Notes: a model not told the origin generated them from the letters alone. Shown: positions 13,792-33,118, numbered from the stretch's first letter. The stretch is 64,000 bases of DNA from Lepidodermella squamata (GCA_047495785.1 JBLDXI010000019.1:3410001-3474000), one strand, 5' to 3'. Numbers and translations are program-made.

Positions 13792-16700
13792 TTACAAATC
13801 ACTTCGGTCGACGACAATCGCACTTGGCGGCGAGGCGAACATCGTCTCGGCCAAATTCTTCGCCGAGTCGTAACTCTGGTTCGGCAAATCCGGCGACGAA
13901 CCAGCTCGTTGCAGGCTGCTGGCCACGGAGGAAGCGCTCAGCGCGGCCTGGTTAAGCGAAGGCTCACTGACAGCCGGCGCCAGTTGCTGCGGCATCTGAA
14001 GCGTGACGGCAATGTTGTTCGAAATGAACGTATCAGACGTCGACAACAGGGTCAGCGTGTCTGAACTAGCGCGATATGGCTCGAAGTGGTTGGTCATGCT
14101 TGAGTTGCGGCCATTCGTCACGGTTGACGTGGTGCGAGCCGGGTCGAGACTGGTCATCGGTTTCATCGAGCTCGAATCGCTAGGAAAGGAGAGATCGTCG
14201 AAAGTCGACCCGCTCGAGCCACTTCCTGACGAGCTGGTCGAGTCTTTGACGACCAGGTTCTGCGGCAACTCTTCCATTTCGTTCAGGTTCAGCGAGCACT
14301 GCGATAGCGATAGCATGTTCTGCATGGGCTTCGACACAACCGGGTTGCGGCAGCCCTCGGCCAGCGGGCGGGAATCGTCGTCGGTCGTGAAAATCGAGTC
14401 GTTGTTGTTGTTGTGGAAGCGCTGGAAGACATTGCGTGAGACGGAGCGGCGCATTGACGTGAAAGCTGAGCTTCCACTCGTCGCGTCATTGGAGCGAGCG
14501 GCGGTTAGGAAAGCGCCGACACGCTGGCTGATTCCGCTAAAAAACAGTAAAAACAAACATATGAAAGCAAAATTCGGAGTCACTACTAGCCTAATTTAGA
14601 GAATTACGATTGCAGAAACCGTAATCTAAAATATGTGACTATTAAAATGCCACCGTTGAAAAGAAGGGAAAATTGGAGCCCCGAACCCCTAATTGTTCCT
14701 TCGACGGAAAATTTTGTCGGCATCTTTCCGCCTAGCCTAATCAAGGAAATTTGGTCTGCTGCTGCAGCCGACTTCAGAAGCAAAGTGTGCACCGTCACGT
14801 AATCGTCATGGCCATTAGCGCCCGAAAGCGTTTTGAGCAGCCAGGCGATCGCCATTCGCTCAACTTTCACGACTTTCACCAAATTTCTCGGTTCGCGTTT
14901 GAAGTGATGGAAGTTAATGGCACTTACTACCCAGGCGAGACTGTTCTCGAACTCGTTGAGAGTCTGCAGCGCCATTTGCGAGAACACAACTGTGACTTCG
15001 ACTTTCGTCGCAACGCTCCATTTAAACGCACCAAATCTAAAGCTGCGGCAATTTTTGCGGTGTTTTTGCGTTTTTTACTAAATGTATTCCCTCTCATGTT
15101 ACGCACATAGGCTATCAACCCGGAGTTATTCGCCCGGGCTACGGATACCACAGCCTGGGTTCGAAATGCATGTCGGCCGAAACCAGACCAGTCGAAGAAT
15201 GGGTCAATGATAAAACATTCATGCCGGGCGACAAGTTCACAGTACGAGACAGCTATTTCGGCCAGTATCTCGTCATAGGTTTGTCTCGCAAAACGCTGTT
15301 GCGAGTGCCAAAGGCACCTGTTGACGCCCTTGTCGGCGTCGGTGGGGTGGGCGAGTTTGACTCGTGTGATGACGCGTCTCACTTCGGTTCTGATGAAGAA
15401 GCAGAGCAAGCGGCAGTCACTGGTTCAAGCGCAGGAAATGTGATCAATGACGATGAGTCGGAATTCAGGTCGTGTACTGCCACTCCTTGAAACGGGCGAT
15501 CTTGGAACGCCGTCGACTTCGCTACGTCGCATTTCGCTGCGATGCGCAAAGCCGCTAAGCAAGGTATTTTCTTCTACGTAACCTATCTATCTCCCCCATC
15601 AACGTTTCTCCTTTTACCTGAAATGGGCGCTCCGACTGATGCAAGGTAGGCCTGTCAGTCGGGATTGCTTGGGATAGACCACCCTATAGGTTCCTATATG
15701 TACTGCAGAATGCGAGCGATGATTTTCGGTCATGAACCTGATTCACACCGCCAAATATATTTATTTTAACAGCTCTCCTGTTTGTCTCTATTAATGGGTC
15801 AAGGTTGGCTGACTTCGAGCCAATAGGCTTTGTTAAAAGTTGGCTGCCCCTTTCAACAGGCGCGAAACCATCATAAACAAAATTGTCCACCCCACCAGAG
15901 GAATACGTAATCAATGCGAGCAGCGCAATTTTTCCCACTAGTCTTTTTGTCATGAGATGCTATCCGTACCTGGGAGCCAAATAAGGGGCCAAAATAGGTT
16001 GCACAAAAGGGGTATGCCTCTACAAAAAATCGAACTCAGAAAAATCGAGAAAAATCGATATTTCCATATCGGGTAATTTTAGTCACATTTTTGTTTGTCG
16101 GAGGAAATAAGACATTGCGTCGGTAAGGCGAATAAAAGGGCCAAGTGCGTTTATCAAAATTTTCCAGGAAACGAAAAAAAATAGATTACGCTTCAATAAA
16201 GCAGTATTTTCGGTCGCCTCTATAGACCTAGGGTTAGTTTTCGATGAGGATCACGAATATCAACTCAGATTTCCCTAAAAACACCTGTAACACCTGCTTG
16301 CTGCACTTGGCCCTTTTATTCGCGATGTTATTCGAAATGCACTTTTTTCGGCAAATGACTGCGTTTCTTCATGGATTTAATAGAAAATGATCAAGAAGCA
16401 TGCCTGTAATAAGATTGAACTTATTCTTGATCGCTATAATCCTTCATTCAATGTAAATGGTTCTTTTAAATTGGCATTGGTTTTAGAGCCTAATCAGCCG
16501 TTCGGTCTCCGATTAAAATGGCTCAAAATCTACCATTTTTCGACATGAAAATTCAGATAATTTGCGAGCAAAACCAAATACCATATTGAGAAACCGAATT
16601 TAACTGAAACAGAACCGAAATTCAAAACTTGGAGTCTTTGAAAAATTCTCGTAAGCAACCATAGAATCCCAATAGAAATCTGAAAACTAAGGTTCGCTGA

Positions 16701-19700
16701 AAAGTAGGTCCCTTTTTCATGAGACAAAGAAAGGCTCTAAAAACATTTCTAAAGCTTCTTCTTGGTAATAACTTTTTCCATACCTATTTCAACAAGTTTC
16801 CGATTCAACTAAAAATGAATAAATTTCCAACGGAAATGATTATAAATCTTTGCTAGATTCATAATTCTGACTAACTACTACCTATTTTGTTTTGAACTGG
16901 TCTATGGCGAATTTGAATAAACGGCAAAAGCCATTCGACGCGCCGGGTCTAATATAGGTGATATAGCTAATAAAACGATTTTCGAAAAACATGCTGCTTA
17001 GCCCTTTTATTCGCGATACCGACGATTGGTCGGATAAAAGAAAGACATTGGTCGGGTGAAAAACGGTTTCCCCATTAAAAAATACTTGGAATGGTTTACT
17101 TTTCATAGAGCCATGTGATCGAAAAGAATGTTTTCATGAAATCTTATTCTCAGTAAATTTATTAAATTAATATTTTTCCGGGTGTGATCGAAAGGAAATT
17201 TGCCCCAATTTTTATTAAATTTATCTGATTTTGAGAAAACCTGAAAATTATTGCTGTTGCGTAACAAGTGAAAATATTGCGAAACACAGATGTAGGTGTC
17301 AGGTGTCATTCTTAATTTCATTCTCAATATTCGTCGTTTTTAGACTAGCGGAGGGTTACGGAGGGGTTCGTTAATGCCATCAGTTGCCAGACGCTTTGTT
17401 TTGATTACGCAACTGCGCTCTCGCGAAAAAAGTGAATTTTAATTTTTAATGGGTTTTCAGAGTGAAAATGCCCTGAGAATTTTTTTTTACTGAAAAATGA
17501 GTTGTAGCTAAAGGAAATTAAGTTCAGGTTGGGCCGAAATCAAATTCAGCTACCGCAGCAAATTAATTTTCGTGGCTATGGCACTCAAAATGGAGGCTGG
17601 GCAAAATCATTTTGCTGCATTTCACTGCTGTGAAGAATATTTTGAATGTCGAATGTGACATCAAAATGTGTTGTATTTTATTATTATTTTATTATTTTTT
17701 ATACAACATGTCGTTCTTTAAAGCAAGGACCGCGACGATGTTTTTCATATTTTGTAGAGGTCGAAATGGGGGATGATTAAAAATTAAAAATTATTATAAA
17801 TCTGCTGTTATAGCGTGTAAAATAACCAAAATTACCGAAGCAGGAGTTTTCCGGGTTTTCCCCGTAAATTTTTAATTTCTACGGTAAATCGCGGATATAA
17901 GCTGGAAGATTCTTCCCATAGGTTTGATTTTGAAAAAATTCAGCTAAATTTCCTCCAAAAATTTGTAAAAATCAATAACGATAACTTATGGAACACGCTG
18001 AATTTCTTTCGGCTACTACTCTTATTCGTTAAATCGCGATTAAAAAGGATCAAATATTTTCCTCGATTTTTTTATTCCAAAAATTTGAAAATTTAAAAAA
18101 TGGTTGCGTAAATCATGGGACAAGTTTTATTTGTTGTAGGTCACGACTTTCATTAGAAAAATAGGGCGAAATTCTCAATCCGCGACCATCTAAATGGTGA
18201 ACCGATTTTAAAAAATTATCGACGTTAGGGTTGATAGTCAAATATTCTTTGCTCATCAAATTTCCGATTTGAATATGGCAAAATTAGTAAATTTAATCAG
18301 ATAATCAAATTATTGAAGAAATTCAACGTGCCGAAATATTCCACTAATTGAGGCTACAAGTAAAAATAACTTTCAAGTACCCATAAAGAAGAAATTATAC
18401 TTCTAAAATTAATTTTTGAAATTGCTTTCTTGACGCTTTGGAAAAAAATCGAGATTCAAATTTCCGAAATTCCTCAGTTGCGTAATCGAAATTTGTCTTA
18501 ACAGAGCCTCTAAATAGAGCATAGTAGCCGATGGCGTTAACGAACGCCTCCGTACCCCTCCGTCGTGTAAAAACGACGATTGAAAAACGAAAGCGACTTC
18601 AAGTTCCTTGACGAAACTTGAATTTTTCAGCCTTCTTATTCAACATTTCGAATATAATCGTAGTCACAATTTTCGCTTCGCGTTGATCGGTTGATCGGTT
18701 CGCGATGGGAAACAGAATGATAATAACGAGAAGAAGGGCAAGAGAGAAAGGGGCAAGAATTACACAAGAAATTAGAATTGTAATTCGATATCTTCGTATG
18801 AACCTCATCGTGGCGACTCCGGGAATCCATGTTTGGTGTCCCTCATAACGCATCTGAGTGATCCTTTGAGCGAAGTTCAGCGTCGATCCCAGGCCACGTT
18901 CGAATTGGCATCGAATGTCTTTTTGGTATACTCAAAGGTTGCTTCAGAGTCATTCGCGATGATGACAACAAATTTCGACTCCGCTACACATGTATTCTGT
19001 GTGCCCGTTGCGTGCTTCATAATATTGCAACATCGCGAAACGAGCGTGTTGATGAAAACTGGCTACCTCAAGAGAAAGAAGGCTCACATAGTTTTTCCCA
19101 CTTATCTAGCGCTTAAGGGTAGTGCAGTAGGCTTTTCTCGTCGGGGTCAACTAGTCGAAATTTTCGATGAAATTTTGACGAAATTGATAAAAATCAAGCT
19201 CGACTTCAATAAACTTGATATGAAGACGAACATTACAAGTGCCTGCTCAAACTTAGCGCGGTTCGAAGGAGAAAGTGTCTGGACAGGACTTGGCGATGTT
19301 TGTAGCCCTGTTGCGTAATCGATTTTGGGCAAAAATATATTAATTTTAAGGAATTTCGCCAATCTTAAAGGAATCTTAAATATTAAATAAAAATTTACCG
19401 AAAAACGGTAAAATTTAAATATTTTTTAGCTCAAAACGACAAAATTTATTTAATTTCAGCTTTTTATAAAAACATTTACTTCGATCACATGGCTCATACC
19501 CACACCAATAAATAATGAATAAATAATACCAATAAATAAATAAATATAGTTACAATTATTATTATTATTATATAATAATAGTAAATAACTCATAATTTTG
19601 AGTCTCGGTCTAAACGGGTTAAATAACAGTGAAGCTTACCGTTCGAGTGGATAAATGCCCTGTTGGCTGTTCCAGGACCAGACGGCGAACATGACCGCAC

Positions 19701-22700
19701 AAGCCGCCAGCATAGACAGCGCCGAAATAACAGCCGCGCGAATCACGTCGCCCTGGCGATCTTCGGCATGCAGCTGCCGGACTCCGAAAGACACGGCATC
19801 ACCCGCGTCCGGGATTTTCTCACTCTTCATCGCAACATCGGCACTGGCGACGTACTGGTTCACCGGGGTTCGGCGGATTCGCTCGAAAAACGCCCGCTGG
19901 TCGATGTAGCACAGCTCGGCGAGTTCGGGCAGCAGGTGCGTGGTCATGTTCACCGGGCGGCACTCTTCCAGTGTTTCGGGGTTGGCGCGACGTTCGAAAT
20001 CGGACGCCCAACGGTAGCCTCGGCGGCATTGGCACACGCCGTCGCGGCACTCCTGGTCGCGGAAAGAGTGGTAGCACAGGGCATCGGGTCCGCAAGGCTC
20101 GCCGTGTACTGAGTAGCGGAAGTCGGGGTTGGGCGAGACGGGTTTGCAGCGCTGGCCGTCGGCCGATGGTGTCCAGCCGGGGATGCAATCGCACGTTCCA
20201 GCATCTGTGCAGGTCATGACCTAACAGGAAAAATAAAATAAAATAAAGTTAGCTAAAAAGAGAAACGAAAGTAGTTGGATAGCACAAAATCCGTTTTTGA
20301 GCTATCCAATGGCGAAGGTCCAATGAGAATCTACATATCCCTGGCAAATGGTAAAATTCCATATCGGGACGAAATTTTGCTTGGGAATTCTCACAGCCTT
20401 AACCTTCAAGTGTCCAATTATCGTTATCGAAAAAAATGAAAACGATTGGTTAATGCAGGGCATTTAGGTGAAAATCAAATTAAACTCAGGTTAATTTTGG
20501 ACGCAAGCAGAAAAAAAATCTGAAAATCTTTGAAACATTTCGTAAATTTTTCGAATTAAAAGTCAAAGGACGATGCAAACTTATAACTCGAAACGACATT
20601 CTTTGAAACTTATTAGCGTTAAAAATAATCAACTAATTGTGATATAATTTGATATAACCAGGTAAAAACCAGAAATTACTGAACAGGAGATTTCAGGGTT
20701 TTTCCGGTAAATTTTCAATTTCTTCGGTAAATCGTGGATAAAGGATGGAATATTCCGCCAGTGGCCCTAATTTCAAAAATTAGTTCAAATTCCTAAAATA
20801 AATTTCTAAAATTAGAAATGGTTGCGCAATTCATGAGGCGCACTGTACTATAAAATTATTAATTATAAGACTGATTTTAAATATCTGAAAACATAGTTTT
20901 TCCAAAATGTAAAACCCGAAATTTTGGATCGAAGTACTGGTATTCATCTCAAATAATGATAAATTACAGCTAAGAACACGCTCAAAGTAACATACCTGAG
21001 ACTCGCAAGAAACCGATTCATCGCACGGCTCGCCGATACCAGCAGCCGGCAAGCAGCTCATGCCGTCAAAGCGAAGCCAGTAGCCACTCGAGCACATGCA
21101 CACCGAAGTCCTCGCATCGCGAACAACACACTCAGCATTTTTCGGACACGTCGTATCCGGCTCGCAGTGACCGTACGGCCGCGACTGATAATTCAGCACC
21201 TTGACGCTCATCGACGGCAACTTTGCCGCCTTGCGAATCTTGATCGGCGCCAACAGGAACATGGTACCCGGCTGAATCATGCCGTAATCCATCTCCTCCA
21301 ACACGTCGTAGAAATCACCCGGGTGATACGCAAAGTCGTCCGGCTCGGCCTCGGCAATAACAGCCGGTGTCATGATGTCGTAGTGGAAACCGATTACATC
21401 CCCCGCCTCGGCGTAAATCTGCTGTTCGACGCCGATTTCAACGGTCTGGAGGCCGTAGCCGAAGGACGTGACCCGGTTAGACCCGATCAATAGATACATT
21501 TGCTGCGTACCATTTCGCCGCCAGATGTCGAAGTAGACCGACGCGGGTTCATCTACAACGCTGAAAAACGACCACGATTTAACGAAGCCACGGCATTTCA
21601 GAGGTTTTGAGACAAAAATCGACAGGGTGTTCTTTTGGCTCTTGGTGTTGAATTCCTTTTCCGGGATAGCCTTGCCCCAAATGCAGCCGGTTACGCAGAG
21701 TGGAGGTTCAGTCCAGCGGCCTGAGACTCGGCACGTCACGTTCTCCTTGCCGACTAGGAAATACCCGCTGTCGCATTTGTAGGTCCGGGTGGCGCCTTGG
21801 GTGGTCTCGCGGCCCATGAGGGCGCTGTTCGGCACGACGGGCGGGTTGCCGCACGAGACGAGGGCGCGGCGGACGATGGGGTTGACGGCGGGGATGCGCC
21901 AGCGTTTTCGGAGGCCGGCACTGCGCTCGGCGAGCACGATGCGGCCGTTCATTTTGATGAGATCGTTGTGGCCGACATTGAACGCCCAGCCGTCGTACAT
22001 CTGCTCAGCCTAAAATAATAATAAAAAGATGTTATTAATCTGAATTTTTAAAATGTGCAATGTTCGCCGACTTTCAACTTCACTTGAACTTCATACTTTC
22101 GATAAATTTCATGTGTCGTCGGCACGTTAACTTCGAAAACTTGTTTTCGGCGAGGCAAAATGGTTTTCAAAACTTTCCGAAATTAAAAGCTGAACTAATC
22201 AAGCTATTTGCTTGCGACCCTGCATCGCCGATGAGCATTCTGCATGCTTAACCGGTAAGTATATTGCACATTTTTCCCCATATCTCATCGAGATGAAGGC
22301 GCGATGAAAGCACTTGAACTCGCCAAAGCATGCTCAACTCTCGAATGGGCTTCTGTTCTTGACCCGTCGAAATGGTCGAATGTTGAAGAACCTGAGCGAT
22401 CGATCTTCGGGGCTCATCAAGTTCGTAATATTGCTGATAAGCTGCAGCTAAAACCATTAATGCTGATTCTGTAACCGTCAAACCTCATCACCGCTCAAAT
22501 TAAGTTAAACAAATTGATAGAGCTAAGACGATCAACCCCAAGTTTGAGCGTCGACCTAAATACCGTATATATAGCTTCATATACCCGTTATTACCGCCCG
22601 TCCCGTTTACAACCCCCTTTTAAGGCCTTTGGAAAAATAAGGCCTCATACTCGCAATAGCAACCCGCGATCTAAATTTGAAACAAAACTTTGAAAATCGC

Positions 22701-25700
22701 ATTTAAAAATAATTGCGCATGCATTTTTGAAATTCCATTTCTGAGGCGTTTTTATGGGCATATTTAATAGAAAATGGCAAAAAATAGGTGTGTGAGAGAA
22801 TTTAAGCAACGAAAATAGCCAGAGTAGCAATGGTTTTCCTAGCATCCATCAACTTGAAAAATTTTCTAGCTCATTTGAAAAAAACTTGAATTTCAAATTT
22901 TCAAAAATTTGCATAAAATAGGCTGAAAACTCGCTATCGAACGATGAAGTTCTCGGTTTTGATGAAACGTTGTTGACTTTAGTTCAAGAATTGTCAATTT
23001 AATCTAATTTTCTCTCAATTTTAACACTTGAAAACTTGCTTTGAAACAATTAAGCCGCATGCTCGCAATTGTAGCACGCCCCGTTTACAACCCCCTCTTT
23101 CGAAGCTTTGAAATTACAATACCCCTGAAGCTATTACGGAAAATACGGTATGTCATGGACAAATGCAAGCCTTGAATTTGTCGGAATCCACGCTGCTACA
23201 AGCGATTGCTGGTAAAACACGCTGGCTAAGAGCAAGCCAACCGAATGCTAAATGAAATGAAATTGAAAGTCGCAGCGACTCTGATGTCACCGATCAATCA
23301 TCTTGAAGATTTGAAAATCCTGGATTCACTTATCAAACGCTTCCCCAATCTGTGAGTTGTTCTCTGCGGTCTCTTGGCATTCTCAAACCAAATTTTCACT
23401 CACTGATTGATTAATCGAAAATCAAATCAAACGTTAGTCACGAAACGGATTTGTTTCTAGTTCTAATTTCAGTCAACTAATTTCGGACTAGTTAGTTTAA
23501 AATTCAAACTTCAGACTAAAAATTAAAACTAGCTACGCCAGTTAGTTAGAAATGACATAGGAAACCAGATAAATTTGAATTATTTGTTCAATTGAAATAC
23601 GGCCCTTCAGTTTATCATACTACGTACCGCAGCGAGCGTTCCTACCAATCAAAAGCCAGTCAAAAGCCTGAAGAACATATTGGTATCGATCTCAAAATAC
23701 TCGGCTTTGTAAGCTTCTTCTTTCGTTAGAGCTGTTAAAACTTCAACAGCCAGCAGGTATGGATAATGAGCTTTTTCTCTAACTTTTTGAATATGTAGTA
23801 CTTTTGCAGACAGTTTGCACGCAAGCCTCTAGATATCGCAATAGGGTTTTGTCAAACAGAAACTTATCTTTACTAGAGTTCGAATACAGCGCCTCCCCCG
23901 TCATCCCCGTCATGACATTTTCTGTATCAAGGTACGAAATCTATTACGCAATTTTTCCAGTGCTCGCAACTGAAGAAAGCTCAAGTTCTAGATACTCTCA
24001 CATAATTCCCAAGTGGAGCTGTTAACAATGGGACCAATGCAGAGTTGTCCACGGGTCCGAAATAGTGGACCCGACCCGAACCGGACTTAGGAATCCCAAA
24101 CCCGGAACCGATTCGACCCGAACCGGGGTCTAAACTGGGCGCATTTTCCGAGGTTTTTCCTGATCGGAAAAGGACATATTCTAGGTTAAGTTCACCGAAA
24201 AATCGCTAAAATGGTTTTCCTACGATTTTACAGCTAATAAGTGACATTGAACACACTAATTTTTTCGGTATGGTGAGTTTCTAGCTATGTCTAGGTAACA
24301 GGCACCCAGTGACGGGTCCACGGGGCGGACCCGGACCCGAACCGAACCGAACCGAACCGGCTTAGAACCGACCCGTGGACAACTCTGGACCAATGCTCAT
24401 TAAATGACAAAATGACAAAATGAAGATTGGAAAAGTATCAATTTCATGGTTTCATTAGTTTCAGATGGTTAAACTCACCAAGTAAGGCAGCGGTTTGGTT
24501 TCGTCAGCGTGCGGCACAACCACGCGTTCCTGCGGCATGAACGGGTCGTCGTAGTGAATACCGACCAAATAGTCCTGCAGCACCGTGATGCGCTCATCGC
24601 CCGTGACGTAGTACGTCTGCAGACCCGTACCGTTAACCGGAACGCGATTCACCCCAACCAACTCAAAGGCCTTCTCGGAGATGTACCGCCAAACGCCGAA
24701 ATACACAACACCCTGCTGGGCGAGGCTGTAAAACTGCCATTCAGCGATTACGCCAGCGCATGGGAATCGCATATCGCGGAAAATGTTCAAAAAACTCGCA
24801 GCGTTCGCCAGCGATTCGTTGAACAAATTCGGCCCAGTTCGGCAGAGCTCGACCGGCAGACAAACCGGCGGGTTGGTCCACATGTTGGGCGAGCGGCAGA
24901 ACACGTCCTTCGAGCCGTGAATTGCGTAGCCCTTGTTGCATTCGTAGCTCGCAACTGCGCCTTGATTCGTGTCTTTCGCCACGTACTTCGCGTGGGGCAC
25001 TTCGGCGGGGAGACCGCAGCCGGGCAGGGCGTTGGCGTAGGCGATGACTGGGGGTAGGCGGAGGGAGGTTCGCGACAACCGGCGCAGGTCGAGGTAGCCG
25101 TGGTTCGAGGAGGTTTGCTGGTCGAGGGCGGCGTCGTTGAGATCGACGATGAAGGTGTCGCCCAGAAGACGGGCCAATTCACCGGCTGTTCGGGTGTTGA
25201 AAACTGGAACTACAGGAGTAACCTACCAAAACAAAAGAGCATTCAGCTATAAAGGTCCGCAAATAATAAGTGAATGTAAATGAATCTTTTGATTCATAGC
25301 TAACAATGATTCACAGACATAGCAAACCTTGGCCGCCTTCAAGCAGGCCATCGGGGCATTGGTTGGCTTCACTCTTCCCATGAAAGTTATACAACGACAC
25401 GATTCTACGAAAGAAACTCTAAATCGTCCACTTTTCCCCGTAGGAAGTGACGGAATTGAGGAATTGAGAATTCTGATTTGAACAAACAAATTCATCTCTA
25501 TTTTGCCATTCCTATTGGGGAGGCACAGTGGCTCAGTTGGGTCGTTGAGCTACTGTGTATCTGAGGGGATATCGCTCGGGACTGGGTTCAAGTCCTAGTG
25601 ACGGAACCAGGATCGAGTCCCCCCTCGGCCCCGCGGTGGTTTACCAATCCATCGCGTTACAAAATAGAAAATTGGGAGGCTGGGAGTGTCAGCTAGACTG

Positions 25701-28700
25701 CACCAGTCGAACTCCGTCATACGGAAATGTTCATCTCACTCACGCTAAGACCTAGGGTTAGAGTAAGTGGCATGCCCTTCTAGTCCTCAAAGTTCGCTTT
25801 GAAAAAGAAATTATTATTATTATATTATTATTCTTTTCAAAATAATGATCAAAATGGGGCTTGAAGCTAGTCACCGTAGGGGTCTCCAGGCCATATATAA
25901 AAAGCCAGAATTGTTTCCGATTCTTACCTTGGTAGTAACGTAATGAATGCCAATGAAGTCACCAGCTGCAACTCGGATGCGATCGTTGACTTCGACAGGT
26001 TGAATAATGCGGCCGACTCTAAGCGCTGGGAATGAGTTCGACCCAACCAGACGATAGTGACCGTTGTCGATCTTGCGCCAGACATCAAAGTAGACAACCT
26101 CGCCCTCGCTCGAGTTCGAATAGAATTCCCACGTGTGAACCTCGCCCGAGCACGTGAATCGCATCTTGGTGAAAGCCATGAGGTGGGCCGGCTCCAAAGA
26201 GCCACCGGCCTGAACAACTTTACCAGCCTTGCAAGCGTTTTGGATCTCTAAAATAGAAATTCATCAATGATGTTGGTAACGGAGAATGCTTTGATAAAAT
26301 GAAGGTAACGGACTATAACTATAGGTTTAATTCTTTTAATTTGAATTTCAATTACGCCCTCGTTTTCGAATTTCTACACATGCTGTTTTGTCCGAATGGT
26401 CTTGACCATTCATTGGGACGATTTTCAATTCAATGTTGAGATGCGTCGGTTCATAAACACTCTTCTCTCAAATTTCAGAACCAGCTGTTTCAGAACCTCA
26501 TCAGAACTCGTTATTGCCTCAGCCTTTGAGCCCGCTCCAAGAAACCAGAAGCATCTTTCCTGGCCGGAAGTTGGTCAAATACGGACCCAAGTATTAGGAG
26601 AAAGTCTTCAAGTTACCTGGGATTCACCGCGACTTGATGATCCATAGTTACACATTTCCTCCAGGGGAAAAATTTCCCTGTCATCCTTTAGCAGAGGGTC
26701 GCAGCCATTCCAGAAATGGGTAGCGCGTTATAATCTCCTGACCCAACAATTAGGAAATAACTTCCCATCTGAACTACAACCGAATGCCATTGAGCCTCAA
26801 ACGCATTTCGGCGAAAACTCGGGGGTATTTGCAAGAGTGAGTTAGTCTCATCTCTAACTTTGGAACCCGCCATCGTCGAATCTTCCATGAAACCGTCCCG
26901 GTCTCCATTCCCCTCTCAAATTTCAGAACAAACCTTTTCAGAACCTCCTGGCTGGAAGTTGGTCAAATATGGACCCGGGTATAAGGAGAAAGTCTTCAAG
27001 TTACCAGAGATTGACCGTGATTTAACGATTCATTGTTGGACATATCGTCCTCGAGATATCGATATTAGGTTTCCGCGGATCATCCTCGCAGAACAAAATT
27101 CAGCCTGAACTATCTATTTACCAAGAATGTTTCATGTTTTAGGACCAACTGCGCCAAGTGGCCTGGCTTACAGTCTTGCCTAAGGCAGTGCGTCACCCTA
27201 TGGGATGATAGTGCGCATAAGTTCAGCCGCCAACAACAGCTCATGACTATCGCTTTAAAATGCTGCACCTTGGAATCGAGCCAAAATAATGGTTTCTCCG
27301 TTACGCGGTATCACAAAGCTATGTTTAACGCAGACATGCCCGAGGCCCGAGGGCGAAATACCGGAGATGGACGGCATATAAGCGAAAATCAGGCGTATCT
27401 GAGTTTACATTTTTCAATTTGTTGATGTCTATTCTGATGTGTTCATCTAGACTTACTTCAAGACGCAAGGCCTCGCGGCCAGCGGTGATGTAACTCTGAT
27501 GCAGAAAACACCAGATTTGAATTGTTGCTCCAAAGTGTCTTACAAATGGCTATTGCGAATGCGAAAGCGGAAGCGATTGCGTAATCAAACCAAGCCGAAC
27601 GTAAAATGAGCCTACGGGATATCTCGGATACTGTTAATACTATGAAGGTTAAGTCTCGCTACTCGAAATGATTGTAACTCACGAATTCAAATCGGCACTG
27701 CTGGTAACGGACCTCCCTTAACAAGTTCAGAAGCTTCGCCACATGTTGGCGTCATTGCGAATCAACGTTATAGCGAAAAAATTTGATCTACAGGTCAGCA
27801 AGTTCAGTTACCTACCCGACGACGGCACCACCAGCGAGGAGGAGAATGATGAATAGTTTTCTTTCTCAATTTTTGATTGACTGATGAAATTTCGAATAAA
27901 TATTTTTGGTTTTTGCCAAAATGATAAATGATAACCTCATTTTTTTGCCACAATCAATACAAAAAAGCTTCTAGGTACATAGTCAAAATGTGCAATGGCG
28001 ATTAATCCATATCTAGATTTTCAAAATGTGTTTGCTACAATAATCGCCTCCTAGATTTTGAGCTCATTTTACTGAAAAACTGAAGCTAATCGAGCTTACA
28101 AGATCTCAAAATTGACGAACAAAATCTGTCCCTAGTCCTGTTCTCAACAGTTTCAGTAGCCAAAAAAATCAGAATTTCCCGAATGACTCACCATTGCATT
28201 TCGGCAGTTCGCCCCAAATACCCGGCGGCTTGCATTCCACCTCCGGCTTGCCAACCATGATGTAGCCAGTTTTGCAGGAATAGGTCGCGAAAACCGACTC
28301 TGTCAGAATCATCGACACGCCCACTTCAGTTTCGTTGGTCGTCGGCCGTTCCCGCCGAATCGTGTTCACCTTGGCGTTGGCATTCGCCAGCGGCGGCGGG
28401 TAGAAACACGGCGAGACGCCAGATTTCTCCCACGATTCGATGCAGTCTGGCGGGCGGGACCACAGGCCGTTCGACATGCACACCACGTTGGGATCGCCGA
28501 CGAGAATGTAGCCGTCGTTGCACTGGTAAGACACGACCGACGTTTCGTGGGATGCATTGCCGATTTGAACCGAATTGTCCACATTTGGCGCCATGCCGCA
28601 ATCAGTCAGAGTGAAATCCTGGGAAGGAAAAACAACATTTATCAATTATTCAAGAAGGACTAATAATTATTTTAAGAGCCTTATTCGATTTTTAGCGGAA

Positions 28701-31700
28701 CCGAATTCGACCGGAAGCAGCACAAAATGTTGAGAAATTGAAAATGATTTTCTGAATTTGTCTGAAATTTCTCCGAAATTTGCTGTAGTATAACGCCTGG
28801 CTGTCAATTTCAGAACGCGAGTTAATCATGGCGAAAATAATGAGTCGAAAAATGAAAATTTCAAATTATTCATCTACCTATAACTTCTATTCTATTGCTC
28901 ATTCCTATCTTCCAAAGTAGGAGAAATTTGGTCCGCTAAAAGACATTCAGATTTGGGGCCTTGCGATTTTTGCCCACTATGTTAACCTTACTCTCATTGG
29001 TTAAGTATCTTTCTTCTGAACTGGCTTTAGCTCGCATAGTCGTATGCAGACGATTCTTCCCCAAAGCGCTCGATGTAACACCAAAATTCGTTCGTTACAC
29101 TTTGGAAAATAAAATTTCCAATTCAAACATGACGGTTGAGCAGAAGGAGAACGTCGTCAACTGGGCTATTTCCTATTTTTCGGCTGGGGCTTACCGAAGT
29201 CTCGCCTGCTGGAGATTTATCGATGAAACAAAGGGGAGAGTTACTTCCCCAATTCATTGGAATAATTTAATTAAATTCCCAATTTTTTTAATTTCCTAAA
29301 GCAAGTTTTCACACGTTACGCACATCGACCCTTTATCGACCATTTTAATGTCGAAGGGGACATCATGGTCTTTCTAGATCGTATAGAAGGCATAGGTCAG
29401 GGATATCAACCCTTCATTGGTGCCGAGACCCGTTCGATCAACGAACCATCAACCCCACCAACCAGGTACGTTTCAGATGGTTCGCGACATTTCAGATCAA
29501 AATTTCTGTCGTTACACGGTACAAACGGGTACAAAAATAAATTTCGTCTGGAAAATACTCAATCACCTTAGTTTCAGGTGTATTAGCCTGCTAAAATCCA
29601 AAGCTGGATTCAAATTTCAGACGATGGCCCAAACAAAAAATAGGCAATAAGTAGTACTTTCGAAACATGTTTATCACAGCAGCGTCGTGTTCTAAAAGTG
29701 AGGAGAATAAATAACTCAATATTTGACACCACTATACGCAAGATCCCTCCAAGTTATCTTTGATTTTCTGCCCTTGTCAAGTTTCATCCTTTGATGGCAA
29801 TTGCCGTATTTGTCCACTTAGCAGCCCGGGGTATAAACATTTCAATCACAAATTTTGAAAAATTGGAAAATCAATTTTTGGTAAATCGATTATTTTCAAT
29901 GTTTTCGAATCGACTTGACCAGTCAACCCTGGGCTGCTACTAGAAAAATACAGCCATCTTTGAGACTTTGACTCCAAAACCGATCATACATGCGATCTCT
30001 ACGATTACTTCAAAAATTAATGACGCCTATGTAAATTATTTCCTATTTTCCAGCTTTGAGAAAAGCCAAACAACTTCTCTCAAAATGAAGATTCAAAAAT
30101 TGCGGATTTTTCGCGAGAAATTAAAAATGCTCACCTTGAGATAAGCCCGCATAGCCACTGCGCATTTGCGAACGCGGAAATCGTACAGCGTCAGCGTGCC
30201 AATGTCCATGGCCGTGTCGATTTTCTCGCGGTACGTCTTCGACAACAGGCACCAGTCGAGCTGCGGCGAGCCCTTCACCGACCCGGGCGACACCATGATG
30301 CCCGACAGACCCGCGTCCGCCGCCGACAGTGTCGCAGCGTCGGCTGCTTTTTCAGTCGGGAAGAAGTCGGTTCCGGGCGTGGTCGGGCCAGTTGCGGTGT
30401 CTGGAAACGCGGCTTCGGTTTCAAGGACCAAACTGCTCGGTGTAGCTCCGTCGTCCGTGAATTCCGGCATGGTTTTCATGTCGGTCATGATCGGAACGCC
30501 GCTGTCCGCATTCGGCGCGTCGAAGTAGATGCCGAGAAAATCGCCCTTTTGCACGTAGATGTCGTACAAATCTTCGCCTAAAAAAAACAGAAAATAATTA
30601 TTGATGTCAAATTTTCATCAAAAATTCATAGCTTAAACAGAAATTTCGGGCAATTGAAACTCTGAAATAAAATAAAAAATTAAATTAATTTCGCCGCAAA
30701 TTTGGCTCAAATAAAACATTTTCTAGATAATTTTTATATTTTATGGTCAACGGTCTAATATTGAAGAGAATCACTGAAAAAGTATAATTAGAAATAATCC
30801 GAGCTGTGGCGTCGATATTAAATTCGACAGTGAAAAACATTAACCCGAACGTCGATAATTCTTTAAAATTGGTTCAGCTGATTTAGATGGCCACCGATTG
30901 AAAATTGCGTCATATTTTCTAAAAAGATTCGTAATCTACAAAAATACGCGACCCACATTTTACGCAAACATTTTTTTAATTTTGCAAGTTTTTGGAGGTA
31001 GGTAAATTTGAAAAATTATAAATTAAAAATTTAGTGAAGAAAACCCGGAAAACTCCGATTGTAACTGCATCGGTAATTTTGACTAAGGTATTTTACCCGT
31101 TTGGACCCTTTCATCTAAATTATTTTCAACTCATTGACAAGTGGAATACTTGCTTACTATTCTCGTGGCATTTTGAATTTTTTAAGATATTTCTGGCCAT
31201 GAGATATGGCAATCTTTAATCGTTGCTCCCGTACAGTTTTTCGCTTCTCATCGTAACGATTTATACGAATTGCGAATTACGTAATTACGTAAAGTAACGA
31301 TTTTGCTTTTACTTTTTTCCAGGGTTACAGAAATCACGGTTTAATCGATAAAAATTGAAGGTAATTTTCATTTTAATAAAGCGAAAAATCAAAATGAAAA
31401 ATCGTACCTTCAAGTGACATGAAACCGTTACGGTCGACCAGGACTTGTTGGTAAGCAATTCGCTGCAAAATCTGGCGCTTCGTCGACGGGCTCGTCCACG
31501 TCATGTTGGTCGCAAACCGCCAAACAGACAGGTAAACTGAGATCGTGTGAATAGCGGCGGCGACTGACAGTAATTCCCAGCGGATGATACGACCGGCGCA
31601 CGGGAAAGACGCGGCCGGCATGAGAGCGAGCCACGTTGGTGATCGCATCGTCGAAAACGAGCGGGGATCAGGGCCAGCATAACAGCTAAACAACGGATGA

Positions 31701-33118
31701 CCTAGAAAAATCGAAAAAAATAATTTAAACATTTCAATCTAAAATTCAAGATTACTTATTTCCATTAGCAAAAAATGGATGAAAATAAAAATAAGAATTA
31801 AATATTTTTTCAGAAAATCGGGAAAAATCGATAATTCTTGAGATGATCGGAATTATCGAATTTATTTGGTAAATGCCAAGTGCTTGTAAAACGAAGGCTT
31901 GTATAGTTCTTGGTAATAAAAACTGAGCCTTTCCTGCTATTTAATATAGGTCAGGTCATCGCTGTTTTATTGCCTCGATTAATGAATGGCGCACTTACGA
32001 TCGACAACGGCCTGTAGGCTGATGAGCGTTGGCTCGGCGTCCAGGTCATCGAAACTGGCAATACGGCCGTGGAGGCGCATGATGTCGCCGTACGTGTAGT
32101 TGGTCGCGTAACAAGACTGCAGTTTCTTGTTCCTCGCCGCAGTGAATGTCCGGGCGTAACGCTGGTAGGCAACCACCGAGTAATCCGACATGATTTGGTC
32201 GTAAAATACACCTGAAATGAAGAAAGAAAATAATAAAATAAATTAGACAAAATGGCAATCAAATTTTATAATTGATCAGAACTATGCTAATAAAAAAATA
32301 AAAATTACTGAAAAAGATCTAATCGCGGGGAAATAATTTTCCAATGGAGAAATGAAATTCCGGAAATTCTGGAAAAAAATCAGTGCTCCAAAAAATCCAA
32401 AACCCTAAATAAAATTGAACGTAATTTGGGTAAAATGAACTCGTAAAAATGGCCATAATTTTTTTAAATTGATAAATAACGAGGAAAAAATCCTAGTTTA
32501 TCACAAAAGGGAAGAATTTTATCACGAAAAATCGGGTGAATTTTGAGAAAGAATCTGAAGAGGGAATTCGTACTTCAATAAATACAAGATCTTTAACAGT
32601 GACTCGAATCTAGAAAATTCTAAAAAAAATTTAAAATTATTCTCACCGATAAAGTCGTTTTTCAAGACATTAATGCGGTTGCCCTCGCGAATTTGAATGC
32701 TGTGCCGGCCGAGCTGCGATCCACGAACGCGGTTGTAGCCAACCAACTGCAGCGTGTCATTGGACGAGCGGCGGAAAAAGCCGAGGTAGGCCGGCGTGTT
32801 GTCATCGGCGCCCGAGTGGAAAATCCACTCGCGAACCGTGCCGTCGCAAACGGAAACGAGCGACGGGCAAAGCAGCAGAAAAGCGCCGTTTCGATTGTTC
32901 AAATTATCATCGGCAATTTCCGAGCCGACGAAACACATTTCTTGCGGCTTAGTCGCGGCTGTTCCGAAGACTTCAAAAGGGTTGTCGACCCGCGAGTACG
33001 ACTGGTAGCCCTGCGGGTTAATAGCGCCGCCAACTCCGATTTGCTGGCCATCGACCGGCGATGATTTGATGAATAATAGTAGTAACAACGCGTTGATTAA
33101 CTTCAACGGTAAAATCAT
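13792..33118 (-). CDS. ~1750 aa type I transmembrane receptor/adhesion protein, 10 exons: SP, five copies of an unassigned ~150 aa domain, four sushi/CCP domains, EGF/EB-like Cys repeats, TM, Ser-rich tail ending SDL
   Basis: Exons 33118-32647, 32211-31999, 31701-31408, 30577-30135, 28618-28192, 26247-25928, 25222-24479, 22009-20996, 20220-19640 and 14536-13792. All junctions are GT-AG and phase-compatible, giving 5253 nt. CCP motifs include YQCNDGYILVG..C..NG.WS.PP.C; the TM is AVISALSMLAACAVMFAVW. Confidence 0.88.
14808..15560 (+). pseudogene. Degenerate DUF3504/Crypton (tyrosine-recombinase-derived, ZMYM/QRICH1-like) fragment inside the last intron of the receptor gene
   Basis: ISRFAFEVMEVNGTYYPGETVLELVESLQRHLREH resembles the DUF3504/Crypton N-terminal pattern L.RF..EVR..NG..YPP.TL..L...LQR.LRE. 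Downstream frames are broken. Confidence 0.5.
16128..16323. mobile_element. Small MITE-like element with 21-bp terminal inverted repeats
   Basis: GCGAATAAAAGGGCCAAGTGC (16128-16148) is the exact reverse complement of 16303-16323. A related end (CCCTTTTATTCGCGAT) recurs near 17002. No clear TSD. Confidence 0.65.
17331..18579. mobile_element. ~1.25 kb non-autonomous DNA transposon/foldback element with ~50-bp imperfect TIRs
   Basis: TCGTCGTTTTTAGAC..GGAGGG.TACGGAGG.GTTCGTTAA.GCCATC (17331-17381) matches its reverse complement at 18530-18579. The interior is AT-rich and non-coding. Confidence 0.75.
20655..20835 (+). repeat. Dispersed intronic repeat also present at ~17825-17915 (plus a short match at ~18100) and in reverse near 31040-31085
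   Basis: Shared AAATTAC.GAA.CAGGAG.TTTC.GGGTTTT.CC.GTAAATTTT.AATTTCT.CGGTAAATCG.GGATA and AAATGGTTGCG.AA.TCATG. Confidence 0.6.
24040..24387. mobile_element. hAT-family MITE, 348 bp, 8-bp TSD GACCAATG
   Basis: TIR CAGAGTTGTCCACGGGTC pairs with GACCCGTGGACAACTCTG. Perfect TSD at 24032-24039 and 24388-24395; subterminal ACCG(A/G)A repeats. Confidence 0.92.
25517..25831 (+). mobile_element. tRNA-derived SINE
   Basis: Pol III A box TGGCTCAGTTGG (~25528), B box GGTTCAAGTCC (~25586), ~200 nt body and (ATT)n tail at ~25810-25831. Confidence 0.7.
26463..27020 (+). repeat. Imperfect direct repeat pair (~26463-26640 and ~26912-27020) in an intron
   Basis: Both carry CTCTCAAATTTCAGAAC...TTTCAGAACCTC and CCTGGC.GGAAGTTGGTCAAATA.GGACCC..GTAT.AGGAGAAAGTCTTCAAGTTACC. 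Confidence 0.7.

What the first reader, a model, noticed from the sequence alone, without database searches (positions are those of the whole stretch)
20996..33118. Receptor built from five copies of an unassigned ~150 aa domain alternating with sushi domains
The consensus C..G....(F).C.G.(I/V)..W.F.S.....VYF.VWR.....L.G.N.V......(Q/R)I.V..GD.IG.(H/Y)YD occurs five times (exons 1-2, 3-4, 6-7, 7-8, 8) in the order SP-X-X-CCP-CCP-X-CCP-X-CCP-X-EGF/EB-TM. I cannot assign X to a named family; it looks beta-rich and could be a lectin-like sandwich. The tail ends in -SDL, a class I PDZ-binding motif. This is a candidate undescribed receptor family.
Basis: partly seen in the sequence, partly recalled or inferred. 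Interest (0 to 1): 0.75.

Follow-up and report, generated by a model that had tools for sequence, protein, structure and literature searches.

The report
Sushi receptor with five unnamed lectin-like domains
A ten-exon gene of a small invertebrate (probably a gastrotrich) encodes a membrane receptor in which five copies of an unnamed sugar-binding-module-like domain alternate with sushi domains; the domain is real, occurs from bacteria to sea stars, has no Pfam family, and is greatly multiplied in this genome.

Summary
On the minus strand a gene of 10 GT-AG exons (33118 to 13792, about 1750 codons) reads: signal peptide, X1, X2, CCP1, CCP2, X3, CCP3, X4, CCP4, X5, EB, EB, TM, tail. A profile built only from copies elsewhere in the genome finds all five X copies (E 1e-12 to 1e-39).

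X is not private to this gene. There are at least 147 copies in this 121-Mb genome. A profile search found 1426 protein clusters, in molluscs, annelids, nemerteans, echinoderms, hemichordates, a choanoflagellate and two bacteria. The 13 eukaryotic proteins that carry a source name are called uncharacterized or named after other domains.

My reading is a multivalent surface-recognition or adhesion receptor, probably binding glycans. The -SDL tail exon is inferred only.

The parts
32647..33118 (-). Exon 1: ATG at 33118, signal peptide (MILPLKLINALLLLLFIKSS...), a linker of about 45 aa, and the N-terminal two thirds of X1 (to ...NDFIG). The donor is G|GTGAGA.
   Evidence: Open frame and start; X1 E 2.6e-23 with the independent HMM; donor seen. 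The signal peptide is judged by eye.
31999..32211 (-). Exon 2: C-terminal third of X1 (VFYDQ...SLQAVVD).
   Evidence: Acceptor TTTCAG|GT completes the Gly codon begun in exon 1; donor C|GTAAGT. The frame continues the GD.IG.(H/Y)YD motif across the junction.
31408..31701 (-). Exon 3: N-terminal part of X2 (CYAG...FPCAGRIIRWELLS...VYLSVWR...).
   Evidence: HMM E 1.8e-12, profile positions 2-81. The acceptor CTAG|GT is the only one that fits the phase-1 donor of exon 2.
30135..30577 (-). Exon 4: rest of X2 (DLYDIYVQKGDFLGIYFD...), with a Thr/Pro/Ala/Ser-rich insert of about 85 aa in the loop after the HYD strand, then the last strands of X2.
   Evidence: HMM E 9.2e-5 at profile positions 88-120; sequence; junctions. 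The insert sits at the indel hot spot of the family (after X5 residues 105-127).
28192..28618 (-). Exon 5: CCP1 and CCP2 (two sushi domains).
   Evidence: Pfam Sushi E 2.3e-13, two stretches; phase-0 acceptor CCCAG|GAT and donor G|GTGAGT.
25928..26247 (-). Exon 6: N-terminal two thirds of X3 (...NACKAGKVV...FTCSGEVHTWEFYS...VYFDVWR...GDFIGIHY...).
   Evidence: HMM E 4.4e-33. The acceptor TTTTAG|AG fits the phase-1 donor of exon 5 and restores the C.aG start of the domain.
24479..25222 (-). Exon 7: C-terminal third of X3, CCP3 (24854-25021), and the N-terminal two thirds of X4.
   Evidence: Pfam Sushi E 3e-7; X4 E 1.4e-39; junctions.
20996..22009 (-). Exon 8: C-terminal third of X4, CCP4 (21692-21856), the whole of X5 (21167-21694), and the first EB/EGF-like module.
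   Evidence: Pfam Sushi 2.2e-7 and EB 3.9e-5; X5 E 3.2e-31. X5 was modelled at pLDDT 89.9. P0001, 80% identical over this exon and 72% over exon 9, covers X5 to TM in one reading frame.
19640..20220 (-). Exon 9: end of EB1, EB2, a juxtamembrane stretch of about 75 aa, the TM helix (AAVISALSMLAACAVMFAVWSW), and the start of the cytoplasmic tail. An in-frame TAA directly follows the proposed donor (CG|GTAAGC).
   Evidence: Pfam EB 2.3e-4. P0001 reads straight across the exon 8/9 junction (CESQ-VM.CTD). The TM helix is judged by eye. Junctions.
13792..14536 (-). Exon 10 (inferred): Ser-rich, probably disordered cytoplasmic tail of 247 aa ending ...VVDRSDL-stop.
   Evidence: Open frame ending SDL*. 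The acceptor TTTTTTAG|C fits the phase-2 donor of exon 9. There is no paralog in the genome, no homolog in the word search and no Pfam hit, so its membership in this gene is unproven.

Best explanation
The locus encodes a type I membrane protein of about 1750 aa. The order of its parts is signal peptide, X1, X2, CCP1, CCP2, X3, CCP3, X4, CCP4, X5, EB, EB, TM helix, Ser-rich tail.

X is a jelly-roll beta-sandwich of about 165 aa in the galactose-binding-domain/CBM fold class. It forms a sequence family that Pfam does not hold. X is an old, mobile extracellular module found in bacteria, a choanoflagellate and many animal phyla. It is strongly multiplied in this genome, which is very probably that of the gastrotrich Lepidodermella squamata.

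Most likely mechanism, inferred: the five X modules are the ligand-binding units, and the short, rigid CCP and EB modules hold them out from the membrane. Their conserved residues form the strands and turns of the scaffold, while the loops vary in sequence and length, so different copies would bind different surface ligands. The ligands are most probably glycans or glycoproteins of matrix, other cells or microbes. Five weak sites in one chain would give avidity. The tail may tie the receptor to cytoplasmic scaffold proteins.

Shown here: the domain order, the repeat, the fold prediction, the family's spread and the lack of a named family. Inferred: ligand class, multivalency, the role of the tail, and the exon 9 to exon 10 join.
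For: Gene model: GT-AG at all nine junctions, with phases that fit and a total of 5253 nt.

Domains: four Sushi and two EB matches. The five X copies are found by a profile that excludes the window.

Spread: 1426 representatives at E<=1e-3 and 269 at E<=1e-10. Named hits come from Ptychodera, Glandiceps, Patiria, Amphiura, Haliotis, Babylonia, Bulinus, Tubulanus, Lineus, Owenia, Capitella, a choanoflagellate, Candidatus Entotheonella and a deltaproteobacterial MAG.

Company: in those proteins X sits beside C-type lectin, SUEL lectin, PAN, LamG, CUB, kringle, SRCR, WSC, VWA and PKD/REJ modules, or in the N-terminal part of a choanoflagellate protein that also has tyrosine-phosphatase, SAM and WW domains.

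Expansion: at least 147 six-frame matches on 17 contigs of the genome.

Architecture conserved: P0009, 30% identical, has X/sushi alternation, two EB modules and a TM. Paralogs L012 and L014 end in X-CCP-X-EB-EB.

Conservation pattern: mean column entropy is 2.03 in strands and 2.50 outside them. The indels cluster in loops after residues 10, 61, 105-127 and 138.
Against: No ligand, expression or localisation data exist.

A shared jelly roll does not show sugar binding. PHR domains and phage capsid decoration modules with this fold bind proteins.

The residues conserved in X look structural (Cys4, Cys34, Gly, Trp41, Trp58, Tyr105), so no conserved binding site can be pointed to.

The tail exon has no support beyond frame and splice signals.

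The structure model rests on 21 paralogous sequences from one genome.
Confidence: 0.8

Rival explanations
1. X is simply a very divergent member of Pfam DUF4082 (PF13313), the module common in bacterial surface proteins. The Atlas's DUF4082 cluster is 84% viral. On this reading the domain is 'already named' and only the model's reach is short.
For: One of 21 copies (L014:1342-1854) hits DUF4082 at E 0.0012 over profile positions 22-101. The Atlas's nearest named cluster is DUF4082, at 0.88. The best Foldseek hits are phage tail proteins. The motif C.G.I..W.FYS...VYL.VWR lines up by eye and in hhalign with V.G.I.GIRFYK...HVGNLWS of DUF4082.
Against: That hit scores 19.2 bits against a cut-off of 28.4, and none of the five window copies hits at E<=1. 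The DUF4082 model finds only that one place in the whole 121-Mb genome (E 0.077). hhalign of 21 X copies against 13 bacterial DUF4082 copies gives probability 0.55%, E 0.11, over 32 columns. The bacterial X-like proteins P0048 and P0073 match X at 1e-27 and 1e-21 but give no DUF4082 hit. The top PDB neighbour, Bxb1, has no DUF4082 in its gp25 or gp29.
Confidence: 0.3
2. X is a protein-protein adhesion or spacer module with no lectin activity. The receptor would then work by homophilic or heterophilic protein contacts, like the CUB-sushi proteins CSMD and SEZ6.
For: The conserved positions are core residues only. PHR domains and phage capsid decoration proteins with the same fold bind proteins. 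CUB-sushi alternation in known neuronal receptors serves protein binding (general knowledge, not tested here).
Against: Among the closest solved neighbours are the lectin-like domain of Cwp84 and the N-terminal module of acetylxylan esterases; a 7tog-related entry is a complex with MeGlcA-Xylp. X often sits beside true lectin modules such as C-type and SUEL. Neither point is decisive.
Confidence: 0.3
3. The locus is not one gene. Exons 1-9 form a receptor with a tail of only 13 aa (...GIYPLER-stop), and the Ser-rich -SDL frame at 13792-14536 belongs to another transcript or is non-coding.
For: An in-frame TAA follows exon 9 at once. The intron would be 5.1 kb, the longest in the gene, and it holds other open frames. 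The tail frame has no paralog and no homolog.
Against: The donor CG|GTAAGC is good and its phase fits an acceptor after a pyrimidine run that opens exactly into the 247-aa frame. The distant homolog P0009 has a tail of about 95 aa, not a stub.
Confidence: 0.35

Closest known systems
CUB-sushi receptors (CSMD1-3, SEZ6 family)
   Same: They are type I membrane proteins in which a beta-sandwich module of 110-170 aa alternates with CCP/sushi modules ahead of a single TM helix.
   Different: The alternating module here is not CUB: no Pfam CUB hit in any copy. It is about 50 aa longer, with a different motif and a jelly-roll (CBM-like) predicted fold. EB modules precede the TM.
Selectins (C-type lectin, EGF, CCP repeats, TM)
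   Same: The same parts list (a lectin-type head, EGF-like modules, CCP spacers, TM and a short tail) and the same proposed logic of a glycan-binding module held out on CCP rods.
   Different: There is one C-type lectin head in selectins against five interleaved X modules here. X is unrelated to C-type lectins. The EGF/EB modules are next to the membrane rather than next to the head.
Pfam DUF4082 (PF13313) and phage minor-tail / decoration jelly rolls
   Same: Nearest named sequence family (one sub-threshold hit; Atlas 0.88) and nearest predicted structures (BFVD E 2.6e-6, TM 0.62). A similar G.I..(W/R)FY...(V/L)W motif sits in the same strands.
   Different: It fails the family's score cut-off, and hhalign is not significant. 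X has two invariant cysteines and a C-terminal third of about 60 aa that DUF4082 (143 positions) does not cover. In 15 of the 16 animal, choanoflagellate and other eukaryotic proteins examined X sits beside extracellular-type modules.
Cwp84 lectin-like domain (PF18560; PDB 4ci7) and the N-terminal module of acetylxylan esterases (7tog; isolated CBM domain 7tok)
   Different: Sequence identity is 8-10% with no Pfam hit. The similarity is at fold level only, and those domains are bacterial.
Sponge aggregation-factor Wreath domain
   Same: An unnamed-at-first beta-sandwich of extracellular recognition proteins. The Atlas's nearest clusters for X include sponge proteins.
   Different: The paper describes Wreath as vWFD-like, as found only in demosponges by its HMM, and as having an Asp-Pro cleavage hairpin; its trimmed model spans about 285 residues (PMC11670116). 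X is about 165 aa, occurs in many phyla and lacks that motif. Rejected.

Membership tests
Sushi/CCP (PF00084) | Profile match above the Pfam gathering score (20.7 bits) | tested here: met
   The scores are 50.8 bits (two stretches, exon 5), 31.2 bits (exon 7) and 31.6 bits (exon 8).
EB module (PF01683) | Profile match above the Pfam gathering score (24.3 bits) | tested here: inconclusive
   The window scores 24.1 bits (exon 8) and 21.6 bits (exon 9), both just under the cut-off. The homolog P0009 scores 31.9 bits, and PF01683 is precomputed for P0001.
DUF4082 (PF13313) | Profile match above the gathering score (28.4 bits) | tested here: not met
   None of the 5 window copies hits at E<=1. One of 21 copies scores 19.2 bits. 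The genome-wide best is E 0.077.
DUF4082 (PF13313) | Significant profile-profile similarity to bona fide members | tested here: not met
   hhalign of A3 against A4 (13 bacterial DUF4082 copies) gives probability 0.55%, E 0.11, over 32 columns. A4 has low diversity (Neff 2.3), so a distant link is not excluded.
CUB (PF00431), as in CSMD/SEZ6 | Profile match to CUB in the module that alternates with sushi | tested here: not met
   No CUB hit in any of the 21 X copies, even at E<=10.
Galactose-binding-domain-like / CBM jelly-roll fold class | Predicted structure superposes on solved members over most of the domain | tested here: met
Lectin_like (PF18560, Cwp84) | Profile match to the family | tested here: not met
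Class I PDZ ligand | C-terminal S/T-x-hydrophobic motif on a cytoplasmic tail | tested here: inconclusive
   The frame ends ...R-S-D-L-stop, which fits the motif. The exon's link to the gene is inferred, and the tail of the distant homolog P0009 ends ...LKLTK. Binding is not testable here.
Wreath domain (sponge aggregation factor) | vWFD-like sandwich with an Asp-Pro hairpin, restricted to demosponges (trimmed model about 285 residues) | tested here: not met
   Size, motif and taxonomic range differ (PMC11670116).

The most novel reading that the evidence does not exclude
X is a pre-metazoan binding module that has never been named. It shares ancestry with the receptor-binding jelly rolls of phage tails and bacterial surface proteins. 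Gastrotrichs have multiplied it (at least 147 copies, some in arrays of about 25-30 modules) into a diversified repertoire of surface-recognition receptors, an innate-immune or adhesion system built on a scaffold different from Ig, LRR, C-type lectin or fibrinogen domains.
Probability: 0.2. Interest if true: 0.7.

Novelty: new variant of a known kind. Interest (0 to 1): 0.45.

Why it matters
A sequence family with more than 1400 clusters at 50% identity still lacks a Pfam model and a name. It is present in bacteria, a choanoflagellate and at least six animal phyla. It sits in proteins annotated 'polycystin-1-like' or 'perlecan', or with no descriptive name at all. Defining the family would improve the annotation of many invertebrate extracellular proteins.

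The match to phage tail and bacterial CBM-type modules gives a testable idea of what it binds.

The very large expansion in a gastrotrich, a phylum with almost no molecular biology, points to a lineage-specific recognition or adhesion system that could be studied. It is not a new kind of biology: mosaic receptors made of a binding sandwich plus sushi and EGF modules are well known.

Tried and rejected
1. Word-index protein search. With exon 8 it found only P0001. With alignment A3 and with the tail exon it found nothing. The tool's length window and its need for shared 5-mers limit it.

I could therefore not fetch the relatives' contigs or any RNA contigs.

3. A metagenome scan with P0001 found no relative.

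4. MAFFT alignment of the exon-split C-terminal fragments together with the N-terminal halves misaligned them (A2). I used single-exon paralog copies instead (A3).

5. The Wreath domain of sponge aggregation factors was considered because the nearest Atlas clusters are from sponges. It was rejected after reading PMC11670116.

6. I tried to reach DUF4082 through the top PDB neighbour. Bxb1 gp25 is Sipho_Gp37 and gp29 has no Pfam family. This was a dead end.

7. DUF4082 was sought in 41 relatives of a myxobacterial genome and none was found. It was then found in 6 of 251 genomes drawn from the class of G002 (Salinisphaera japonica) and aligned. hhalign against X was not significant.

8. Foldseek against PDB gave nothing at E<=1e-3.

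9. The joined (spliced) protein was deliberately not built, searched or folded. All searches were exon by exon, by reference.

10. The contig is not human-like, and no toxin or virus issue arose.
Full report
**What is there**

I placed every exon boundary by eye on the sequence.

| Exon | Coordinates |
|---|---|
| 1 | 33118-32647 |
| 2 | 32211-31999 |
| 3 | 31701-31408 |
| 4 | 30577-30135 |
| 5 | 28618-28192 |
| 6 | 26247-25928 |
| 7 | 25222-24479 |
| 8 | 22009-20996 |
| 9 | 20220-19640 |
| 10 | 14536-13792 |

All nine introns are GT...AG and all phases fit. The exons sum to 5253 nt, which is 1750 codons plus the stop.

Nothing was searched or folded as a spliced model, and every query was one exon or part of one, given by reference.

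The contig is not human-like. Genome size, contig number and G+C (121.2 Mb, 151 contigs) fit the published Lepidodermella squamata assembly (122 Mb, 157 contigs, 43% GC; PMC11660948). Earlier notes of this scan name the same species. I did not test that identification further.

**Domain order**

- Pfam finds four sushi domains: two in exon 5, one in exon 7 and one in exon 8.
- Pfam finds two EB modules, at the end of exon 8 and in exon 9. They are borderline here, but EB passes its cut-off in the homolog P0009 and is listed for P0001.
- An N-terminal signal peptide and a 22-residue hydrophobic helix in exon 9 are plain to the eye.
- P0001 comes from an unnamed ENA assembly and is 80% identical over exon 8 and 72% over exon 9. 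It reads straight through the exon 8/9 junction, which supports that join.

**Is the repeat real?**

Yes. I built a profile from 20 full-length X copies taken from other loci of the same genome, leaving the window out. It finds the five copies at E 2.6e-23, 1.8e-12, 4.4e-33, 1.4e-39 and 3.2e-31, and nothing else in the 64 kb. Identity of the other copies to X5 is 19-36%.

The invariant or nearly invariant positions, in X5 numbering, are Cys4, Gly7, Cys34, Gly36, Trp41, Ser45, Trp58, Gly71, Gly81, Gly102 and Tyr105.

X2 carries a Thr/Pro/Ala/Ser-rich insert of about 85 aa. It sits in the loop after the HYD strand, where the family has most of its indels.

**What X is not**

- No Pfam-A model (copy with models up to 2025) hits any window copy at E<=1.
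- Among 21 full copies scanned at E<=10, the only notable hit is one to DUF4082 at E 0.0012, 19.2 bits against a cut-off of 28.4.
- NCBIfam gives nothing.
- A profile search of all PDB sequences gives only chance-level Rab/YPT1 GTPase rows at E 0.5-1.
- The DUF4082 model finds just that one place in the whole genome.
- I collected 13 true DUF4082 domains from bacterial genomes of the class of G002 and compared the profiles. hhalign gives probability 0.55% and E 0.11 over 32 columns. Those columns are the stretch that also looks alike by eye: C.G.I..W.FYS...VWR against V.G.I.GIRFYK...LWS.
- X is therefore not a member of DUF4082 by any score I could compute. A very distant common origin remains possible.

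**What X looks like**

AlphaFold2 with the 21-sequence alignment gives a confident model of X5: mean pLDDT 89.9, pTM 0.87, eleven strands and no long helix.

- Foldseek against PDB gives nothing at E<=1e-3.
- Foldseek against predicted viral structures gives ten hits at E<=1e-3. They include phage minor tail and neck-passage proteins. The best is E 2.6e-6, TM 0.62, rmsd 3.8 A over 167 columns.
- The language-model search, which does not use the model, names DUF4082, Lectin_like (the Cwp84 domain) and PHR as the nearest named clusters.

**How widespread it is**

A profile search of 1.84 billion representatives finds 1426 proteins at E<=1e-3, 269 at E<=1e-10 and 41 at E<=1e-30. Of 30 hits looked up, the named ones are listed below.

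| Group | Organisms |
|---|---|
| Hemichordates | Ptychodera, Glandiceps ('polycystin-1-like') |
| Echinoderms | Patiria, Amphiura |
| Molluscs | Haliotis (three species), Babylonia, Bulinus (one called 'perlecan') |
| Nemerteans | Tubulanus, Lineus |
| Annelids | Owenia, Capitella |
| Choanoflagellate | sp. UC4, in a protein that also has tyrosine-phosphatase, SAM and WW domains |
| Other EukProt protist | one protein, taxon unknown |
| Bacteria | Candidatus Entotheonella (on an 8-Mb contig); a deltaproteobacterial MAG |

- In the 14 named or IMG proteins and two unnamed ENA relatives that I scanned, the X stretches lie outside every significant Pfam match. The one overlap is a stretch-less DHHW match in P0073. 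The neighbouring modules are C-type and SUEL lectins, PAN, LamG, CUB, kringle, SRCR, WSC, VWA, PKD/REJ and sushi.
- Many non-gastrotrich hits match only profile positions of about 5-115. The conserved core is therefore the first 100 residues or so, and the last third is more lineage-specific.
- Within this genome the five-copy profile finds at least 147 places on 17 contigs.
- These include dense arrays at C19:0.853-0.876 Mb, C15:4.98-5.04 Mb, C19:3.24-3.25 Mb and several on C55.
- There are intronless frames with three X copies followed by sushi repeats.
- There are paralogs with the same X-CCP-X-EB-EB end as this gene.
- P0009 (1442 aa on a 5.7-kb contig, so probably a transcript) is only about 30% identical. 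It nevertheless keeps sushi/X alternation, two EB modules, a TM and a tail of about 95 aa. The receptor layout is therefore conserved beyond this species.

**How it probably works**

This part is inferred. The protein is a single-pass surface receptor whose ectodomain strings five jelly-roll modules on short, rigid CCP and EB modules.

- The conserved residues of X lie in the strands and turns. The loops vary in sequence and length: mean entropy is 2.03 in strands and 2.50 outside them, and the indels cluster in loops.
- That pattern suits a stable scaffold with variable binding loops.
- I think the most likely ligands are glycans or glycoproteins on matrix, other cells or microbes, bound weakly by each module and strongly by five together. 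The grounds are the nearest folds (bacterial CBM-like and lectin-like modules, phage tail and capsid modules) and the company X keeps in other proteins. I put this at about 0.4.
- Protein-protein adhesion, as in CUB-sushi receptors, is the main rival (0.3).

**The tail**

Exon 9 is followed at once by an in-frame TAA, but also has a good donor (CG|GTAAGC). The phase of that donor fits an acceptor 5.1 kb downstream, which opens into a 247-aa Ser-rich frame ending RSDL.

That frame has no paralog, no homolog in the word search and no Pfam family. The tail of P0009 does not end in a PDZ-type motif. The -SDL/PDZ idea is therefore possible but unsupported.

**Novelty**

The kind of protein is known: a mosaic receptor of binding sandwiches, sushi and EGF-like modules. 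The fold class of X is also known.

What is new is the sequence family. It is large and old, absent from Pfam and NCBIfam, unnamed in every record I could see, and very strongly expanded in this gastrotrich-like genome. I found no paper on it: the two papers that mention DUF4082 concern bacteria, and the L. squamata genome paper does not mention sushi, lectin or gene families.

Noticed in passing
G000:C19:853389-876413 (outside the window): About 25-30 X-domain matches lie every 700-800 bp over 23 kb, in open frames of 300-770 aa. This looks like one or a few giant genes made almost only of tandem X modules.
   Followed up: no
L010:199-3075 (G000:C15:5038147-5041461), minus strand: An intronless 959-aa frame holds three complete X domains followed by at least five sushi domains and Thr/Pro-rich linkers. 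It shows that X also occurs as head-to-tail repeats without sushi between them.
   Followed up: partly
L012:139-1905 and L014:1-2085 (G000:C15 4.983-4.987 Mb; C55 0.514-0.517 Mb): These paralogs have the same C-terminal layout as the window gene (X-CCP-X-EB-EB), so the receptor type is a small gene family within the larger X expansion.
   Followed up: partly
P0073 (Candidatus Entotheonella, 913 aa) and P0048 / L022 (deltaproteobacterial MAG, 920 aa): These bacterial proteins have two or three X-like modules (E 1.6e-21 and 1.4e-27) next to LamG or thrombospondin type 3 repeats. Entotheonella is a sponge symbiont. The direction of any transfer between bacteria and animals is open.
   Followed up: partly
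P0105 (choanoflagellate sp. UC4, 1640 aa): X modules (best stretch 602-722) lie N-terminal to the tyrosine-phosphatase domain (849-1098) of a protein that also has SAM and WW domains. No TM helix was checked. X was therefore already part of a multidomain phosphatase protein in a close unicellular relative of animals.
   Followed up: no
window 14600-15500, both strands (inside the proposed intron 9): This stretch is 50% G+C and has open frames of 106-160 aa on both strands with no significant Pfam match (one weak QRICH1 hit, E 0.0068). It may be a separate small gene or a transposon remnant nested in the intron.
   Followed up: partly
P0001 against window 20996-20220: The 80%-identical relative's predicted protein runs without a break across the site of the window's 775-bp intron 8. 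Either the predictor spliced it or that species lacks the intron.
   Followed up: no
P0003 (1166 aa, ENA): This relative combines a hormone-receptor (HRM) domain, seven sushi domains and three X modules. That is another X/sushi architecture in what is probably a related animal.
   Followed up: no
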